Source: Trichosphaerium sp. ATCC 40318 (taxonomy: Eukaryota > Protista > Tubulinea). Taken from it: a stretch of 64,000 bases of DNA. The notes under the pieces were generated by a model that worked only from the letters and a program-made list of their open reading frames with translations, made no database searches and was not told the DNA's origin. Shown here one piece after another: positions 4,932 through 53,571 of the stretch (positions within the stretch are counted from its first letter, which is position 1; each line of letters opens with the position of its first letter). The stretch spans positions 1 to 64,000 of the forward strand of contig JALMLS010000131.1 in NCBI GenBank assembly GCA_038496445.1, given 5' to 3'. The translations under genes and the position numbers were made by a program.

Positions 4932-5303
4932 TTTAACAGTCTAATAGGTATGTGACCGGAGTAACGGTTTCTCGTTTAGGTATTGTTAAAGCAAGTAACG
5001 AAAAGCGTTACACAAAATGACTTAACTAACTTAAGTGAAGAGAATATTGTACAGCACACAGCTCGCTATCCTAAGGTTGCACACTGGTTTTGTCCGTACC
5101 ATTAGACGCGTAGGAAATTATTTATCCGATTCTACAAACAAAAAAAACTCAACAAGATACAGTGGACACGATTTTTTAACATGAGTGCAAACAAACATAT
5201 TGAAAGCTTTACAATTTTTTTTATTATTATTTTTTTAGGATATGTTGGTTAGTACACAACTCAAAAGACACTATGCCTTTCGACAAAGATGTAATTATGC
5301 TTG

Positions 5304-8300
5304 TCACTTACGATCCTCGCGACTATTGTACAAGGTTAATTCACAAAATAACAAGAACTATAAAACATACGGAGGACTTGCTGAGCGGTCTCGGCTTGTA
5401 CTTCTGCTACGTGATTTGCTCTCATCCTTATCTCGCCTATCTTTGCTCTTACTACGACTTCTACTTCTTCGCCTACTAGAACGATCGCGATACGACCTGT
5501 CATATCTACCGTGAAAAAGAAAAATAAGTCTACTGTTCACAAAAAAAAAGGTCTAAGAAAAGTATGCCACCCTACCTGTCTCTACCACCTCTTCGCCTAT
5601 CACCACCACGCTCGCGGTCATAACCTCTATCTGAACGATAATCACGGCCCCTTCTTCCGCCATCACGGTACCCTCCACGACCTCTACTGCGATAACCACC
5701 GCCATAGTAGTCTCTAGAACCTTCATACCCTCCTTCGCCACCTTCCATGCCACCTTGGCCATAATAGTAACCTAGAAATTTATTAAGGGGTAAAAAACGC
5801 AAGCTACTAAAGAAAGCACATCTAACGTGGACCAAAGGTACGTTGTCACGTGAGTTCTTTAAAAAATAAATCGTACTGTAGTATTTTTTCCAATATTCTT
5901 CAATGTCTTCTTGTGAGTATTGCTGTTGTTGCTGTCTAGCTCTCTTTAACTCAGCAGGTAGACCGTCATATCCTCCTTCACGTGGGCGCTTTCTAGAGTT
6001 CTGAAAAACCCGTCAAATAACGTAACACTCAACCAAGTAAAACGACTTACATGCTTCCCGTCTCCACCTTGCTTAAATCCACCATCATTATTATACTTTT
6101 TAAAGTCCCCACCGTTTGGTGGACCATTACCATCGTGCCCAGGCTTCTTTATTAAAGACCTTGGGAATTTATCAGAGAAGTTATCTGGAGGCGGTCCTCC
6201 TTGGTTAAAGTGTTGAGGCCTGCCACCGCCACCGCCACCATCATTATCACCCTAAAGATAGGGTGAGTAAACGTTAGTTTAGATTGTATTGTTCGTACAT
6301 AGCTTCCGCCCTCTCCAGGTCTATTGGAGTATGTATTGTTCATAGAAGGCTTGAATCCCTTAATTTGTAGATTAGAAAAAAAAGAGCCAAGCACGTGTTT
6401 CACTTACGTTAGATGTACCAATAGGAACAACAGATTCACCAGTTTCCCAATTAAATCGCTCTGTAGCTCCAAATCCGCGAGCCCATCCAACCTTCATTGG
6501 ACGACCTTCAAGAAGCATATCATGGGTAGCCTATGATTCTATTAAACCAAAAAACCAAACTACAACCCAGGACCCTCCAAGATGTCTCAAAAACAGAACA
6601 ACAAAAAAAATCACGTGAAGAGGAGAAAGAAAAAAAATAGACTCAGTTCAGACTCCTTTCATTGTGTACCTCTCTAGCTTTTTCAGCACCTGCTCGATCA
6701 TAGAAATTACAGAAAGAAATGTGTTTGTGCGCCAAGTACTAAAATTGAGTTTATAAACACAATACCGTACACTACAATGTTTCTTATTAAGAAACAAACA
6801 AATACAAACCTTTACAGATCTTATAGCACCGTGTTGACAAAATATAGCAAACAACATTTCTTGGCTTACAGTAGGTGCCAGATTTCCAACAAATAATGTA
6901 GTACTTAACACTAAAAAGGAGATAATGTTAGTACAGTCTTTGTAACAATAAAAAAAATCAATGTGGCCTACCTTTACGATATCCTGGAGCTACCTGCCAA
7001 CTCCCATCACTCTCGTCTTTTGGTGGAGGTGGTAGAGAGTTCTGCTAAAGATAGTTGTAAGCACTTTTGGTCACCAAACTATTAATGTATGTGGCGTACT
7101 TGTTCTTGCTCTTGTTGATTAAATAATTGTTGTGGAGGTACAAGCATAGCTTTGTTTGACCTATTATAATGTAAGACGTAAAGAATAAAAGCTTAGGTAA
7201 CGTGGTTTTACTGTTTAACATGTCTAGCATTTAAACTTAGTACTTACGCTTGTGAAGCAATAGCTACAGCCTCTTTTGTTCTTCTCTCGGCAGCACTCTG
7301 CTGCTCTTGTCGTCTACGGTTTTCCTCTTCTTCTCGTAGTCTCTGTTGTTCTGCTATTCTACTAGCATCATCTGTTTCCTCATCATAATCGAACAGTGGG
7401 TTTGGCACCTTATTTACTGCAACAGGTTATTAGTGATCAGCGTGAGTTAAGAACTACGCTCTTATATACGAACCTTGTGGTTGTTGAATGGTCTGAATAG
7501 GTTGTGCACTTCCAGGGGGCGTTGAAGGCCGAGGAGGTGTGCGAGAACCTAAGAAATGGTAAGATATCATTCAATTGAAAGAGCAGGCTTACTGTTCAAG
7601 TTTTGGTGTCCGTTCCATCCAGCATTGTTCTGTTGGTATCCTTGTGGCGGTGGGTAGTTAGGCGGAGGTTGTTGATATTGTCTACCAAAGTCTCCTATAT
7701 CCAACAATCAATACAGACCAAAGAAAGTAGAAACTACAAAATAGATACTTACCTTGTTGATTGTAACCTTGTTGATACGAGTTTGGTGCATTTCCACCCA
7801 TATTATTCTGTTGGTATCCTCCTTGATTAGGTGGATAACCACCTTGATTAGGCCACTGGTTTTGTTGTATTTGCTGTGGTGGCATACCACCTCCTTGAAA
7901 ATTGTTTGTTGGAGGTGCTTGTTGAGGTAACTGTACACCTGCATAACAGGTAAGCGATGCATTCTACTGAAACAATACCAACAAAAAGTAAAAAAACTGG
8001 GTTTGACTCCGCAAACCGGCTGAGTATGGGTACGAGCTCAGTTCTGCTATCCTCCCGCTTACCACGATGGAAGCTTTTCCCTGCTCTGTTTCCAGCCTGA
8101 GGCGGTTTACCTCTCATTATCAACCAGGATCTCTCCACCTCCGCGGTGAAACCCCTGTTGGTCGATGGCACGAGAGGACAGAACATCAACACCCGAGGAT
8201 CCCACCTCACATCCGGTCACGTAGTCATTCCCAGTCTTTAAATGGCCTACTGCTAGTAGTTACAGGTATTCGCTACACACCCGCCGATAGAGAAATGCAA

Positions 8301-9113
8301 ACATAGACTTTTTAAACACTCGCTAGCGAGAATAAAATTTGTTGTGGGTTTGATTTGTTTTACGATCATTTCTTCCTTTACGCGGTTTACAAAAGGTACA
8401 GTACCTTCTGGTGCTTGGCCTGTCTTTGCCATAATCACCAAAGCAAGTGCTTGTAATATCTCTTGGTTGAACAAGCCTCCTTTACCCCATATACTTACAA
8501 CCTTACGCACAGAACGCTAAAGTTCGCTGTTAGTACGGAAAAAATGCATAATAAAAGAAAACGATCAAAACTTATAGTACACGCGTTAAAACGCTACAAG
8601 TCCGGTATTTTTACGCGTACCCTATCCTTTTCTACACATTCCAACACCTGAGTAATTGTAGTCACGATATTCTTTGCAAATCTATCTGCATACGTTCTGT
8701 CACTTCCATACTTGTTTCTGAATACTTTACAGATAGAATCTACAAGGTACAAACCAGACAAGCGAAATTCAGGCTGTGCCCTTGCGATGAATCGCTCGAT
8801 AAGGTACACAACATCTTTGTAATTCTATACACTACAATAAAAAGCAATTCGTTTGAAAGAAAAGAACAAATTTATTTTTTCGCCCGTTACAAAAGTTACA
8901 AAGGCACAAAACGAAGTTTTTTTCTAATTTGCTAAAACGCTCTTTTCCTTCATTAATACAAACTACAGTACACAGGTACGAAACAATACATACTTTGCGA
9001 TACTTCAGAGCTAGTTTTGTAACCGAAGCTACACGACGAGCAGATACTGGCGGTTTTTTCTTAGATATTGCTGCCAATTCTTCTGTGAGTTCGTCTTCGC
9101 CATCCCATGACAT
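5304..9113 (-). CDS. SCAF4/SCAF8 (Nrd1/Seb1-like) Pol II CTD-interacting domain + RRM + RGG/RS protein, multi-exon
   Basis: CID motif (RLSGLYLVDSI), P/Q/G-rich linker, FDYDEE, RRM (STTLFVGNL...MKVGWARG), RGG and RS tail ending PPREDRK-TGA. Confidence 0.85.
7990..7996 (-). terminator. Pol III oligo-T terminator of SRP RNA
   Basis: T7 run at the 3' end of the closing helix. Confidence 0.7.
7991..8285 (-). ncRNA. Signal recognition particle RNA (7SL), intronic
   Basis: Alu domain GGCGGGUGU-GUAGCGA-AUACCU-GUAA-CUACU-AGC-AGUAG-GCC. Helix 6 has a GGAG loop (~8131-8155). Helix 8 is CAGGCUGGAAACAGAGCAGG (~8080-8099). ACUGGG pairs with CCCAGU, followed by a T7 run. Length is about 295 nt. Confidence 0.92.
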
Positions 9114-9392
9114 GGTAATATTTATCTAATTGACTTCACGCAATGGCAGAGAGTTCGCTAAATACAAGCCAAGAATGATAGTCAAACAATTTATGTAGAC
9201 TTTGAACTGAGACACCAGCATCGTAGTGACGTTAAACACGAGTTTGTTAGTTCGCTAGCCGCATTTTGTTATTAGTTTTGACCTGTGGTGTCTAAAATGC
9301 CAAATGAGATTACTGGATTGCTTACGGCTACTAGTTAGCTACCGTAGAGCTAAAAGCGCATTAAAGTAAGTTTTGACACGAAATGTTTCAAC

Positions 9393-11898
9393 TAATGATG
9401 TTGGTTTAAGAATAAACTGCAAATTCATATTTATTTGGAAGTGGTCAAAAGTTATTTTTATTTATTCATATAATCATTTGTGTTCATCTTGGAGCAAATG
9501 GTTACGACACACAGAGTACTTACAAACACGAGTAGGAGAGAGTCTGTTTCTATCATTAGTAATTAAGCGACTAGCCTGTGAAAAGCTTCTTTCAGTCATT
9601 GCTTGAGAGGCTGGAATCGCTAAATATTTCTGAGCCAAAGATGCTAAGATTGGATACTTTTCTTTGTTTGTTCTCCACCATCTAAGCTCTTCGCCATCAT
9701 TAGTGGTTTTTATCGGTGGTTCTACCTTGTATCTTTCTAGTTCTTTGCTTGTATCAAGCGGAGTAGTAGGGGATGGTGCACTACTAAACAGAAGTAAGTA
9801 AACATTGAAACAAAAAAAAGTAAAACAGAAAAAAGACCAATACGTGAAGAATTGTCTCGCTTCTCCTGCTTCTGAAACTCCTCCTCTAGTGCTCACTGCA
9901 CTAGGTACTTCACCTTCAATACCCTTATTGTACAGTTAGTACGCATTATGTAAATTATTGTACTGTAGGCATGTTCTCATCTCTTGATACAGCTACAAGT
10001 TCATTAAATTCGGCTTCTAATATTTCCCAAGCTTCATCCTCGTCTCCATCAGTGAGGTGGTTGCAGCCCTTAAAGCGCGGATCAAGGACTGTTGCTAAGA
10101 GGGTAACAACAGGGAGCTCATCTCATATGAGACGTATGGCATTGAGATAGTTTGTAGCCACATTTTTGGTTTGTATTTGCATTTCATCAAGATTTTCATT
10201 TTCGGCAATTTCTTCCACTACACAAGTCAGTAAAAAACAATAATGAAGCTAAACAACACATACACGGATGAATCATCTCTTGGAGAAGCTTTTCTATCTT
10301 TTCTAAGGCCACCAACACCCATGATTGCGTTGTGTACTTCTCTGCTTCGAGAATTTCAATAGCATAAACTGTTGGTTGAAACAAAAGAATCATGTTCTCA
10401 ATAAAACTCCATTTCTCAAAGGAAAACTCAGGTACGTATGGCTACAAACAAAGTAAATATTTACACGTGCACAAAAAAACCAGTACATACCCTAAATCTA
10501 CTATCACATACTAGTCGGTAGTTTGTAAGCATTCGTCTCATTTCGTGAGCTTTTTTCAACATTGTAATTGTTGATGAGAAGCGTGTACAAGTATCACGTG
10601 GCAGTTTTTTGTATTGGTCACTGCAAAACGCTTTCCAGGCGCGTCTAAACGGATCTGAGCAGCTACACCTCGCAATAAACACTCTTAAGGGCTTGAGAAT
10701 GCTTTCTTCAATTTCTGGGATTAATGCTTTACGCATTGCGTTATTCAAGATGTGACAGAGGCAGCGAAGGTCAGTAACCATTCTAGGGTACCACCAATTA
10801 ATTTTATACAAGAACAATGGTAGTTAAACGTACTCAGAGGTATATTTCGCCACTTGGGCGAGTGTGTCTCTGCGAAGCTTTCTTGAAGAAAAGTAAGAAC
10901 AATAAATAATAAAAAAAACCCACAAAAAAAACTAGTCGTACCCAATAGTGAATTTAACTGAGGCCAATTCGCCTCCATCTGTTACACCAGCAACTGGTAA
11001 AACACCATCACCTAGCCACGCCACGTTTGAGCCATCCCACTCTCCACAAAGTACGTCAGCTACAAGTGAACCAATAGTTACCGCTGCCAAAAAAAGTAAG
11101 CAAAAAAAAAGTTTAAACAAAGTTGTTTCGTGCCTTTGTGGTCTTCTTCACAAGGCACCACACCTACCAACTTACGACACAATACATAGTCATCGGATAT
11201 CCAATGCATTGATATGCCAGCGTAATATTCTTTGGAAACTTTACTTTTCCAAAGATCGACTGCAAAGGTTGGTGACTTCGCTGTTTGAGTTATCAGCTTA
11301 GCTTCATTTATTGTTTTGTCGCTGAGTGCATCAGCCCGTAAAGTGATCTTGTTTCTCCCTGGTAGAATGAACCCAGGTACAGCATAATTAAACAATAGTT
11401 TAAAGTACCGTTTTGATACGAGGTGAAAAGGAAGATTGTGAGCAACAAAACAAATAGCCAACAAATCTATCAATTTCTAGCGAACAATTAGAAATTGCAA
11501 AAAACCACTTGTTATTACCTCTTGTTCCCCCGGTAATAAAGGCCGAATGGTTCTGGACACATACTTGTCCATAGGACCTGTTTTATCTTCTCCGTCAGCA
11601 AAAGAGTCTGTTTTGGAGTCGTAGCCATGTTTGGTGCGTAAGTGAGTTAACAGGTTGCTTGTTGATGTTCCTTTAGGTCGAGGCACAAAACAACTACAAC
11701 GTTTACACTGAAAGCCTCCATCAACATGTACAAAGTGTTTATACACTGGTGATCGCAGAGTACGAATACTACAAACCACTGTGTTTTTGGGCTCAGCCAT
11801 CTCGATGAATTGTGTAAATTCAAAAAGTCAATTCATAGTCCAATTTTTTTTGGTGTATTCAAATTTATTCTTTATTTATTCTTAAACCAACATCATTA
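9393..11898 (-). mobile_element. Full-length hAT DNA transposon (2506 bp)
   Basis: Perfect 24-bp TIRs TAATGATGTTGGTTTAAGAATAAA (9393-9416; 11875-11898). Perfect 8-bp TSD GTTTCAAC (9385-9392; 11899-11906). Encodes a transposase. Confidence 0.97.
9474..11800 (-). pseudogene. hAT transposase (BED finger, DDE, dimerisation domain), 9 exons, one in-frame TGA
   Basis: BED finger (FQCKRC...STSNLLTHLRTKH), AVDLW, VTDGG, CLCH, TRFSS, LDPRFK, WW...YPILA...ASQAMTERSFS. TGA at 10123-10125 in RLI*DELP. Confidence 0.88.
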
Positions 11899-51967: not shown

Positions 51968-53571
51968 TTACTGCGGTTTTTCAAAATAGTTGTTTCCTAG
52001 GTGAAGCAAGGAACCCCATGCGTATTTTATAGTCTGACTCTTCTTTAAAGTTTAACCGTTTTGATAGCCATTTGTGGGAGGCTGGAGATCGCGGAGCCTT
52101 AACCTTTTTGGATTCAAAAACTTCTAAAAAAATACATTTGTAAGAAAAAACTTGGAAAGCAAAATCAATGGTAAACGTAGTGGTGTAAACACTGGGTCTA
52201 CATTAGATATAAAGAACAATAATACTCATAATGTGGAAAAGTGTTTTGAGCGCTGAAGGAACAAATAACTGCGCAACAAAACACTTTTTGTGGAATTTGA
52301 AGGAAATGTAACAAGTGACCTCATAAAAGTGTTCACAGACTCCACCAAGTTATCCCTTTGAAAGAACCGTTTGTTTTGAACATGGCTCAATCAGAAAACC
52401 ATGAGTAGTTTGGTGGAGGCTTACACTAAAGGACTGACACGTGTGGCTTAAATAAAGCAGTTTCCGTTCAGGTGTTTGTGAGTTTTTCTTTAGAAATGAA
52501 CCCGTTTTGTTTCAATGTGATATAGAGAATGATTTCGTCAAAAAAAGGGTTTTCAAACAATCGTATGTTAAAGCTGCAAGCCAAAATAGAATAGTAGTTG
52601 TGGATTTCTTTCTTTCCAGGAAAAAAAAAGTATATGTACCTGATACTTCAAACTCTGCTGGATATATGTTACGCCCAAATATATCATCAGGATCTGTATC
52701 AGCTTGGTTACGAATATTTTCTTCTTGTGGATCAAGAGACCACAGAAATTCTTCAGGACTTTAAAAACAACAAAGTCAGCCAAACGAATTAGTCAAAAAA
52801 ACACAAAAAACAACAAACAGATTTCAACGTAATACAACGCTCAAACGAAAAAAAACAATCGTCACAAACGGATGCCAATGCTAAAAAAGATGTTCCTGTG
52901 GTAGTGGATCACGTGGACGGTTTGGTGTTATAGATCAAGTAAAAAACATGAAAAAACAAAATGCAAGAAACGCACTCTTTGGGTACTTTCTCGCTATCGA
53001 AAGATAGCCTAGGTTGAGAACCTATACTACTTGGAGACACAGAAATATCATAAGTGAACCCCGGACAAGATGTATTACCTACATAGAGACTTAGTAGAGC
53101 TGCGGACGAGGTAGGAATTCAAAAAACTAAAAAGTCTATTTAAACTGCTACAAAAAGTCCTCCAAATCAGAAAGGTTCGCCATTGGATCTTATTCACGTA
53201 TACGATAACGTACCATACTCTGTGAGGTCTTGTTTCTGGTTTTTTAATTTTGAATCGGTTATTTGTTGTTTTGAATTTAAACTTCCTCTAGAGCCCTTTC
53301 GACGCGTCGAGTTTTGCTCTGGAGCATCTTTCACGGTGGCGCGAACTTGGTTTGCTTCCACTTTTGCGTTTTCGACTATTTTCATTGCCTCTGCGTTAGC
53401 TTGCATGACTATACGCCGCGCTTCGGCTGATGCAGCTGCAACGATACTTTCGTACACAGCATTTGTTTTATCGTTAAGAGCTTCTTGTTCTCCTCTCTTT
53501 TGCTCTAGTTTGTATTAATATAACGGTTGAAAGCTAACCCGAGGTTTGCACTTACGTTCTAACAAGCTCAT
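51968..53571 (-). CDS. Hypothetical protein(s) with N-terminal coiled coil; exon linkage unresolved
   Basis: Exon-like segments (SIVAAASAEARRIVMQANAEA; PEEFLWSLDPQEENIR; EVFESKKVKAPRSP...*) are bounded by GT/AG. The region may hold two genes. Confidence 0.35.

What the first reader, a model, noticed from the sequence alone, without database searches (positions are those of the whole stretch)
7939..8404. Complete SRP (7SL) RNA gene nested, same strand, in an intron of the Nrd1/Seb1/SCAF-type termination factor gene
Seen: an unusually long intron (7939-8404, about 466 nt) directly after the CID exons holds a ~295-nt SRP RNA with Alu domain, helices 6 and 8 and a T7 terminator. Known: 7SL is normally a stand-alone Pol III gene, and CID-RRM proteins (Nrd1, Seb1, SCAF4/8) control Pol II termination, with Nrd1 autoregulated by premature termination. 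Inference: the RNA is either Pol III-transcribed inside a Pol II gene, where it could act as a roadblock or attenuator for the host, or processed from the intron.
Basis: partly seen in the sequence, partly recalled or inferred. Interest (0 to 1): 0.8.

Follow-up and report, generated by a model that had tools for sequence, protein, structure and literature searches.

The report
SRP RNA gene nested in intron
A complete signal-recognition-particle RNA gene with what look like its own promoter and terminator sits, in the same direction, inside one oversized intron of a gene for an RNA polymerase II termination-type factor in an amoeba-like protist; this is a real and tidy case of a gene within a gene, but nothing shows that it regulates its host.

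Summary
Rfam finds one full-length SRP RNA (RF00017, 129.8 bits against a cutoff of 70) at 8285..7990 on the minus strand. Spliced cDNA contigs from two runs in two studies join the CID exons to the downstream exons and skip exactly 7939-8404 (466 nt, GT..AG). The host is therefore one 17-exon, 707-codon CID+RRM gene of the SCAF4/8-Seb1-Nrd1 type, on the same strand as the RNA.

The intron holds a self-contained unit: a DUSE-like ACCCACAA at -64..-57, TTTAAAAA at -31..-24, the RNA, then T7 followed by T5. This favours independent Pol III transcription over processing from the intron.

A 9-of-10 direct repeat brackets the 398-nt cassette. Removing the cassette and one repeat copy leaves a 58-nt intron, typical for this gene. 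A distant relative has the same intron position but only about 112 nt and no SRP RNA, which suggests lineage-specific insertion.

At least one diverged second SRP copy is expressed. Expression of this copy fits the data but is not proven. No data support a roadblock or attenuator role. In the one published test of a nested Pol III unit, the sense orientation had no effect on the host.

The scan noted this same stretch once before, in an overlapping window. It is a new member of a known kind, of moderate to low interest.

The parts
7990..8285 (-). SRP (7SL) RNA gene, 296 nt, with Alu and S domains
   Evidence: Rfam RF00017, 129.8 bits, full model 1-299; fold z = -5.0
7990..7996 (-). T7 run at the RNA 3' end (Pol III terminator type); a second T5 run lies at 7987-7983
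   Evidence: Sequence; terminator-like site
8309..8316 (-). TATA-like box TTTAAAAA, -31..-24 from the RNA 5' end at 8285
   Evidence: Sequence; composite CCCACAA-N20-30-TTTAAA found twice in the window against 0.10 expected
8342..8349 (-). DUSE-like box ACCCACAA, -64..-57
   Evidence: Matches 7 of 8 positions of the published [AT]CCCA[AT]AA, which sits about 63 bp upstream (PMC3188802; about 60 nt, at Pol II and Pol III ncRNA genes, PMC7919456)
7939..8404 (-). Host intron 3, 466 nt, GT..AG, phase 1, containing the whole SRP unit
   Evidence: Joint skipping 466 nt in contigs of X1 and X3; splice-site check
8389..8398 (-). Direct repeat copy 1, TACCTTTTGT, just after the 5' splice site
   Evidence: the repeat finder family D8; shuffle test P about 0.03 anywhere and about 0.003 abutting the terminator
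7981..7990 (-). Direct repeat copy 2, TACTTTTTGT, abutting the terminator; with copy 1 it brackets the 398-nt cassette 8388..7991
   Evidence: removing the cassette and one copy leaves a 58-nt intron
5358..9113 (-). Host CDS, 17 exons, 707 codons (ATG at 9113, stop at 5360-5358): CID, Q/N/G-rich linker, acidic and charged stretch, RRM, RG- and RS-rich tail
   Evidence: Exon-by-exon phase bookkeeping with no internal stops; spliced contigs; 5' end at about 9159 from a template-switch oligo tail
8405..8824 (-). CID exons 2 and 3 (8824-8621 and 8516-8405)
   Evidence: Pfam CID 3.9e-9 and CID C-terminus; SCAF4 6xkb 8.8e-13 and SCAF8 3d9x entries about 4e-12
6408..6910 (-). RRM exons (6910-6810, 6738-6670, 6530-6408)
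   Evidence: Pfam RRM_1 2.9e-6; tblastn to the orthologous transcript L001
7753..7938 (-). Exon 4 (Q/N/G-rich linker), joined in frame to exon 3 across the SRP intron

Best explanation
This is a stand-alone, externally promoted Pol III-type SRP RNA gene that lies wholly inside intron 3 of a Pol II-transcribed CID+RRM (SCAF4/8-Seb1-Nrd1 type) gene, in the same orientation. Shown: the RNA is a complete SRP RNA, the surrounding 466 nt are removed as an ordinary GT..AG intron from a single host mRNA, and a promoter-like pair of boxes and a T-run terminator flank the RNA at canonical distances, all within the intron. Inferred: Pol III starts at about 8285, using the DUSE-like box at -64 and the TATA-like box at -31, and stops in the T7 run. 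Pol II reads through the unit, and the spliceosome removes it. The 5' and 3' ends of the RNA pair in its rod-shaped fold, so the insert should loop out and keep the two splice sites close together. Also inferred: the 398-nt promoter-RNA-terminator cassette entered a pre-existing intron of about 58 nt at the DNA level in this lineage, leaving a 10-bp duplication. The nesting is most likely a neutral consequence of where the cassette landed, not a regulatory device.
For: Full-length RF00017 hit at 129.8 bits, the only Rfam hit in 64 kb. One 2149-nt spliced contig (X3) links all exons from 9159 to 5388, and the 466-nt skip is seen in X1 and X3, from two studies. Loose ends carry the SMART template-switch oligo, so these are cDNA. 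There are 17 exons, all in phase, and all 16 introns are GT..AG. ACCCACAA lies at -64..-57 and TTTAAAAA at -31..-24. The published DUSE is [AT]CCCA[AT]AA at about -60 to -63 and is used by both Pol II and Pol III ncRNA genes. The composite motif occurs twice in the window against 0.10 expected, and one of the two sits exactly in front of the SRP RNA. T7 then T5 follow directly at the RNA 3' end. There is no poly(A) tail and no truncation, so it is not a retro-copy. In X1, X3 and X4 no contig covers the intron flanks (8286-8404, 7939-7989), while SRP-matching contigs exist as separate pieces. X2 has exact-match contigs over 8080-8166, including the copy-specific A at 8137, at depth about 5000 against 2-7 for host exons. 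The 9-of-10 direct repeat brackets the cassette, with P about 0.003 to 0.03, and the residual intron of 58 nt compares with a median of 61. The homologous intron in relative L003, at the same codon and phase, is about 112 nt with no SRP hit.
Against: No direct evidence of Pol III use: no ChIP, 5' end chemistry or 3' end mapping. In X1 and X4 the assembled SRP contigs carry 7 differences and diverge beyond 8231, so they come from another copy. Expression of this copy rests only on 60-77-nt exact contigs in X2, a run whose RNA status is a guess and which also holds other SRP variants. The DUSE is described only in Dictyostelia, and its authors did not expect it to be conserved outside them. Its use in this genome rests on earlier unchecked AI notes and on one locus here. 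The motif matches the published consensus at 7 of 8 positions. The direct repeat is short, T-rich and was found post hoc. The two relatives are distant, at 50-60% identity in the CID exons.
Confidence: 0.75

Rival explanations
1. The nested copy is a silent or decaying duplicate. The cell's SRP RNA comes from the diverged paralogue or paralogues elsewhere, and the intron copy is merely carried along and spliced out.
For: In X1 and X4 the only assembled SRP contigs differ from this copy at 7 positions in 153-175 nt and diverge past 8231, while host exons are identical. The insertion looks recent, and the nesting is absent in relatives.
Against: The copy scores 129.8 bits over the full model, with intact helix 6 and helix 8 motifs. 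The promoter-like boxes and T7 are intact. X2 holds exact-match contigs with the copy-specific A at 8137 at about the same depth (5090) as the G variant (5433). Contigs drop minor variants, so absence from X1 and X4 is weak evidence.
Confidence: 0.12
2. The SRP RNA is made by Pol II as part of the host pre-mRNA and trimmed out of the excised intron, as intronic snoRNAs are.
For: Sense orientation inside a spliced intron. Intron-embedded mid-size RNAs are a well-known strategy (PMC6619189).
Against: The RNA is preceded at canonical distances by DUSE-like and TATA-like boxes and ends exactly at a T7 run, features that processed intronic RNAs do not need. No SRP RNA is known to be made this way (own knowledge). 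The paralogue shows the RNA is also made from at least one other locus.
Confidence: 0.05
3. One reading: Pol III complexes on the nested gene act as a roadblock or attenuator for Pol II on the termination-factor host. This would couple Pol III activity, or the factor's own termination activity, to host expression.
For: A Pol III unit in an intron of a transcription-machinery gene can lower host expression by interference (the MIR in Polr3e, PMC5358760). The host belongs to the family that includes Nrd1, which is autoregulated by premature termination (own knowledge).
Against: In that study the sense orientation had no measurable effect (P 0.13-0.17), and only the antisense orientation did. Here the unit is in sense. 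Full-length spliced host mRNA was assembled in X3 and the joint is seen in X1, and no contig ends in this intron. The arrangement is absent from the relatives fetched and looks like a recent insertion. The unspliced contigs seen lie in intron 1, next to an A7 run, and fit internal oligo-dT priming.
Confidence: 0.06

Closest known systems
Stand-alone eukaryotic SRP (7SL) RNA genes (Rfam RF00017, clan CL00003)
   Same: Full Alu plus S domain RNA of about 300 nt; an upstream TATA-type element and a T-run terminator, as expected of Pol III 7SL genes.
   Different: The gene lies inside an intron of a protein-coding gene on the same strand, not in intergenic DNA.
DUSE-promoted ncRNA genes of Dictyostelium (PMC3188802, PMC7919456)
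   Same: A CCCA-core box about 60 nt upstream of the RNA start, combined with a T-run terminator.
   Different: The box matches 7 of 8 positions of the published consensus. The organism is not a dictyostelid, and DUSE has not been described outside that group. In D. discoideum and the other dictyostelids analysed, Class I RNA genes are all intergenic.
MIR SINE nested in intron 1 of Polr3e (Yeganeh et al. 2017, PMC5358760)
   Same: A Pol III transcription unit inside an intron of a gene for a transcription-machinery protein.
   Different: The MIR is antisense, is a SINE rather than an essential RNA gene, and is conserved across mammals. Interference was shown for the antisense orientation only. 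Here the unit is in sense, is a complete SRP RNA gene, and is not conserved in the relatives fetched.
Intronic snoRNA and scaRNA genes
   Same: A structured mid-size RNA in sense orientation within a spliced intron.
   Different: Those lack their own promoter and terminator and depend on host transcription and exonucleolytic trimming. This unit carries promoter-like boxes and a T7 run.
7SL-derived retro-copies (Alu, B1, 7SL pseudogenes) in introns
   Same: 7SL-related sequence within an intron, flanked by a short direct repeat.
   Different: It has a complete S domain, no A-tail and no truncation, and about 100 nt of upstream promoter lies inside the repeat-bounded unit. An RNA-mediated copy would not carry that upstream promoter.

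Membership tests
Eukaryotic SRP RNA (RF00017 / CL00003) | Full-length covariance-model match above the gathering score | tested here: met
   129.8 bits against 70, model positions 1-299 of 299
Eukaryotic SRP RNA (RF00017 / CL00003) | Alu domain (helices 2-4, UGUAAU-type motif) and S domain (helix 6; helix 8 GNAR loop with AGCA/CAGG loops) | tested here: met
   Alignment: CCUGUAAC; helix 6 GGAG loop; CAGGCUGGAAACAGAGCAGG with high posterior probability
Eukaryotic SRP RNA (RF00017 / CL00003) | Expressed as a discrete, abundant RNA from this locus | tested here: inconclusive
   Exact contigs over 8080-8166 at depth about 5000 in X2, but the X1 and X4 contigs come from a diverged copy
Externally promoted (type-3-like, DUSE + TATA) Pol III gene | Proximal element about 60 nt upstream of the start | tested here: met
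   ACCCACAA at -64..-57, matching 7 of 8 positions of [AT]CCCA[AT]AA
Externally promoted (type-3-like, DUSE + TATA) Pol III gene | TATA-like box near -30 and a run of at least 4 T at the 3' end | tested here: met
   TTTAAAAA at -31..-24; T7 then T5
Externally promoted (type-3-like, DUSE + TATA) Pol III gene | Pol III occupancy and dependence on it | not testable with these tools
   Needs ChIP or in vitro transcription
CID-RRM Pol II CTD-binding factors (SCAF4/SCAF8, Seb1, Nrd1) | N-terminal CID domain | tested here: met
   Pfam CID 3.9e-9 on exon 2 and the CID C-terminus on exon 3; SCAF4 and SCAF8 CID structures at 1e-12
CID-RRM Pol II CTD-binding factors (SCAF4/SCAF8, Seb1, Nrd1) | RRM downstream in the same polypeptide | tested here: met
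   RRM_1 2.9e-6; one spliced contig links both domains; orthologues P0002 and P0012 carry CID plus RRM_1; the P0002 RRM region matches the Nrd1 and Seb1 RRM structures
CID-RRM Pol II CTD-binding factors (SCAF4/SCAF8, Seb1, Nrd1) | Role in Pol II termination or anti-termination | not testable with these tools
   Inferred from family membership only
Intron-processed ncRNA (snoRNA-like) | No promoter or terminator of its own; ends defined by trimming | tested here: not met
   Promoter-like boxes and a T7 run at canonical positions
7SL retro-pseudogene / SINE | 3' A-rich tail, frequent truncation, no upstream promoter carried along | tested here: not met
   No A-tail, full length, and about 100 nt of upstream sequence lies within the repeat-bounded unit

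The most novel reading that the evidence does not exclude
The unit is a DNA-level mobile or duplicative Pol III gene cassette: promoter, RNA and terminator in 398 nt, bounded by a 10-bp target duplication. It recently landed in a 58-nt intron. It would belong to the same system that, according to an earlier unchecked note on this genome, spread a shared upstream cassette to about 100 small-RNA genes. As an alternative or in addition, its Pol III complexes could tune the dose of the host termination factor.
Probability: 0.12. Interest if true: 0.6.

Novelty: new member of a known kind. Interest (0 to 1): 0.33.

Why it matters
Pol III genes inside Pol II introns are known, including tRNA genes, SINEs and some snRNA-type genes. 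I found no report of a complete, apparently functional SRP RNA gene nested in sense in an intron, after six full-text searches, three of them aimed at this point. The locus is a clean natural test bed for whether co-directional Pol III and Pol II transcription can coexist within 466 nt without harming splicing. Its host, a Pol II termination-type factor, gives any interference a built-in readout. The repeat-bounded cassette also hints at how externally promoted small-RNA genes move or duplicate in this genome. Without evidence of regulation or conservation, it remains mainly an annotation-level curiosity.

Tried and rejected
1. A word-based protein search with the CID exon found nothing, because the length filter excludes full-length proteins.
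2. The exhaustive representative search gave relatives of at most 55% identity. P0007 and P0005 have no contig on record.
3. L001 is a transcript, so it cannot inform on introns. L002 ends 570 nt after the CID exon and has no SRP hit.
4. The metagenome scan with the helix-8 core returned 7 SRP RNAs that share only that core (59% mean column identity). None lies near CID exons, and two are ciliate nanochromosomes. They are therefore useless for testing nesting or the promoter.
5. Attempts to name the organism failed. The PPR ORF is not on record. The sedolisin ORF gave at best 54% identity with no taxon label. The only named relative of the host protein is from Arcella intermedia.
7. The Dictyostelium papers that first defined DUSE (PMC516072, PMC1489274) are not held.
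8. The retro-pseudogene reading is rejected: no A-tail, full length, and the promoter is included in the unit.
9. The 'two separate genes' reading is rejected, because a single spliced contig links the CID and RRM exons.
Full report
**Observation.** A covariance-model scan of all 64 kb against Rfam 15 returns one hit only: RF00017 (Metazoa_SRP) at window 8285..7990 on the minus strand. It scores 129.8 bits against a gathering score of 70, with E 7e-33, and covers model positions 1-299 of 299. On the intron alone the E-value is 6e-35. The alignment shows the Alu-domain CCUGUAAC motif, helix 6 closed by GGAG, and the helix 8 core CAGGCUGGAAACAGAGCAGG. The 296-nt RNA folds into a long rod at -123 kcal/mol, z = -5.0 against dinucleotide shuffles. 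No tRNA gene is present in the window.

**Host gene.** The minus strand carries an ATG at 9113 followed by 17 exons. I checked the exons one by one by phase bookkeeping, without joining them. All are open in the expected phase, all 16 introns are GT..AG, and the CDS is 707 codons ending at 5360-5358.
- Exon 2 (8824-8621) matches Pfam CID at 3.9e-9, and exon 3 matches the CID C-terminus. An exon at 6910-6810 matches RRM_1 at 2.9e-6.
- Among solved structures, exon 2 is closest to the CID domains of human SCAF4 (6xkb, 8.8e-13) and SCAF8/RBM16 (about 4e-12).
- The RRM region of the orthologue P0002 matches the Nrd1 and Seb1 RRM structures over more than 100 residues.

**Transcript evidence.** Read laying placed Logan contigs of four runs on 5200-9400. 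One 2149-nt contig of X3 runs from 5388 to 9159 with every intron removed, including a joint that skips 466 nt (CT..AC on the plus strand, which is GT..AG on the minus strand). X1, from a different study, shows the same joint. Loose ends in X3 and X4 carry the SMART template-switch oligo, so these libraries are cDNA. The X3 contig's end at 9159, with a CCC-plus-oligo tail, marks the host 5' end. The SRP intron is 466 nt. The other fifteen introns are 44-169 nt with a median of 61.

**Anatomy inside the intron (minus strand).**
- 8404: 5' splice site, GTACTG.
- 8398-8389: TACCTTTTGT (direct repeat copy 1).
- 8349-8342: ACCCACAA, at -64..-57 from the RNA start.
- 8316-8309: TTTAAAAA, at -31..-24.
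- 8285: RNA start (G).
- 7996-7990: T7 at the RNA 3' end, then AC, then T5 at 7987-7983.
- 7940-7939: the AG of the 3' splice site, 51 nt after the T7 run.

The published Dictyostelium upstream sequence element (DUSE) is [AT]CCCA[AT]AA at about 63 bp upstream (PMC3188802). It lies about 60 nt from the start site, contains three consecutive C residues, and is found at both Pol II and Pol III ncRNA genes (PMC7919456). The box here matches 7 of 8 positions at the right distance. The composite CCCACAA-N20-30-TTTAAA occurs twice in the window against 0.10 expected, and one occurrence lies exactly in front of the only SRP RNA.

The lead to read this as DUSE plus TATA came from earlier, unchecked notes of this scan. 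They describe this genome as a marine amoeba whose U6, RNase P, MRP and SRP genes use such promoters. I could test that only at this locus. The authors of PMC7919456 did not expect DUSE to be conserved outside Dictyostelia, so 'DUSE-like' is an inference.

**Is this copy expressed?**
- In X1 and X4, the contigs over 8057-8231 carry 7 differences and diverge beyond 8231, while host exons are identical. A second, diverged SRP RNA gene therefore exists and is expressed.
- In X2, whose RNA status is a guess, 57-60-nt matches over 8080-8166 are exact. The copy-specific A at 8137 has depth 5090 against 5433 for the G variant. Host exons there have depth 2-7.
- This fits strong expression of the nested copy but does not prove it. 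X2 also holds other SRP variants that share only the helix 8 core.
- No contig in X1, X3 or X4 covers the intron flanks. The SRP-matching pieces are therefore not intron-retaining host transcripts.

**Origin.** The repeat finder lists TACCTTTTGT (8398-8389) and TACTTTTTGT (7990-7981) as a 9-of-10 direct repeat. Together they bracket the 398-nt cassette 8388..7991.
- In shuffles of the two intron flanks, a repeat this good occurs with P about 0.03 anywhere and about 0.003 if it must abut the terminator. The repeat was noticed post hoc, so this is suggestive only.
- Removing the cassette and one repeat copy leaves a 58-nt intron, against a median of 61 for the gene.
- Relatives are distant. The exhaustive search with exon 2 gave at most 55% identity.
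- Metagenomic contig L003 (with L004 and L005) carries the orthologue, at 50-60% identity in exons 1-2 and 43% in exon 3. It has an intron at the same codon and phase (…APS|G against …APE|G). That intron is about 112 nt, and no SRP hit occurs anywhere on the contig.
- L002 has no SRP hit within 570 nt of the CID exon.
- The intron position is therefore older than the nesting, or the nesting was lost in the relatives.

**Mechanism.** The best-supported reading is an independent Pol III-type gene nested in a Pol II intron (confidence 0.75). Processing from the intron is unlikely, given the promoter-like boxes and the terminator. A silent duplicate cannot be excluded (0.12).

Full-length spliced host mRNA is assembled in X3, and the intron joint is also present in X1. 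No contig ends in or reads into this intron, and the arrangement is not conserved. In the Polr3e/MIR study, a Pol III unit placed in an intron reduced host expression only in the antisense orientation. The sense orientation had no measurable effect (PMC5358760).

The higher-depth unspliced contigs lie over exon 1 and intron 1. They end next to an A7 run, which fits internal oligo-dT priming rather than attenuation.

**Comparison and novelty.** The RNA is a member of the SRP RNA family, and the host is a member of the CID-RRM family. The arrangement belongs to the known kind 'Pol III unit nested in a Pol II intron'. Six full-text literature searches, three of them aimed at this point, found no report of a complete SRP RNA gene nested this way. 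A review treats intron-embedded mid-size RNAs as host-dependent snoRNA-type genes. I file it as a new member of a known kind.

**Limits.**
- Only this window of the genome was available, so copy number and the shared-cassette claim could not be checked.
- The organism could not be named.
Exons were searched separately by reference.

Noticed in passing
window 9474-10817 (-): ORFs of a hAT-transposase-like gene (Pfam Dimer_Tnp_hAT 3.4e-19 at 9474-9896) lie directly upstream of the host gene's 5' end (about 9159). It appears split by short introns, so it may be domesticated or a decayed element.
   Followed up: no
window 52025-52079 (-): A second DUSE-like box (TCCCACAA, 52079-52072) is followed by TTTAAA and then TATAAAA (52031-52025). 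It has no Rfam hit and could be another small-RNA gene promoter.
   Followed up: partly
window 8912-9364: Unspliced contigs cover exon 1 plus part of intron 1 (X1 8912-9173 at depth 28.7; X4 8942-9364, which extends past the mapped 5' end). They end beside an A7 run in intron 1, so they probably come from internal oligo-dT priming on pre-mRNA or from an upstream or antisense transcript.
   Followed up: partly
window 8057-8231 and 8072-8106: At least one diverged, expressed SRP RNA paralogue exists (7 differences; it diverges beyond 8231). In run X2 at least three further SRP-like contigs share only the helix 8 core. This indicates either several paralogues or a mixed sample.
   Followed up: partly
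L006:1-120 and L010:1894-1990: Two metagenomic SRP RNA genes lie about 20-100 nt from C4A4 telomere-type repeats. These are probably ciliate gene-sized chromosomes that each carry an SRP RNA gene. L006 also has TCCCATAA at -62.
   Followed up: no
L009:92-621 (-): A bacterial RNase P RNA (310.8 bits) lies 13 nt from an S-domain-only match to Metazoa_SRP (103 bits). This is probably a chimeric metatranscriptome contig.
   Followed up: no
L003:4541-4970: In the relative, the intron between CID exons 2 and 3 is unusually long (about 430 nt, AT-rich) and has no Rfam hit. In that lineage a different intron is the oversized one.
   Followed up: no
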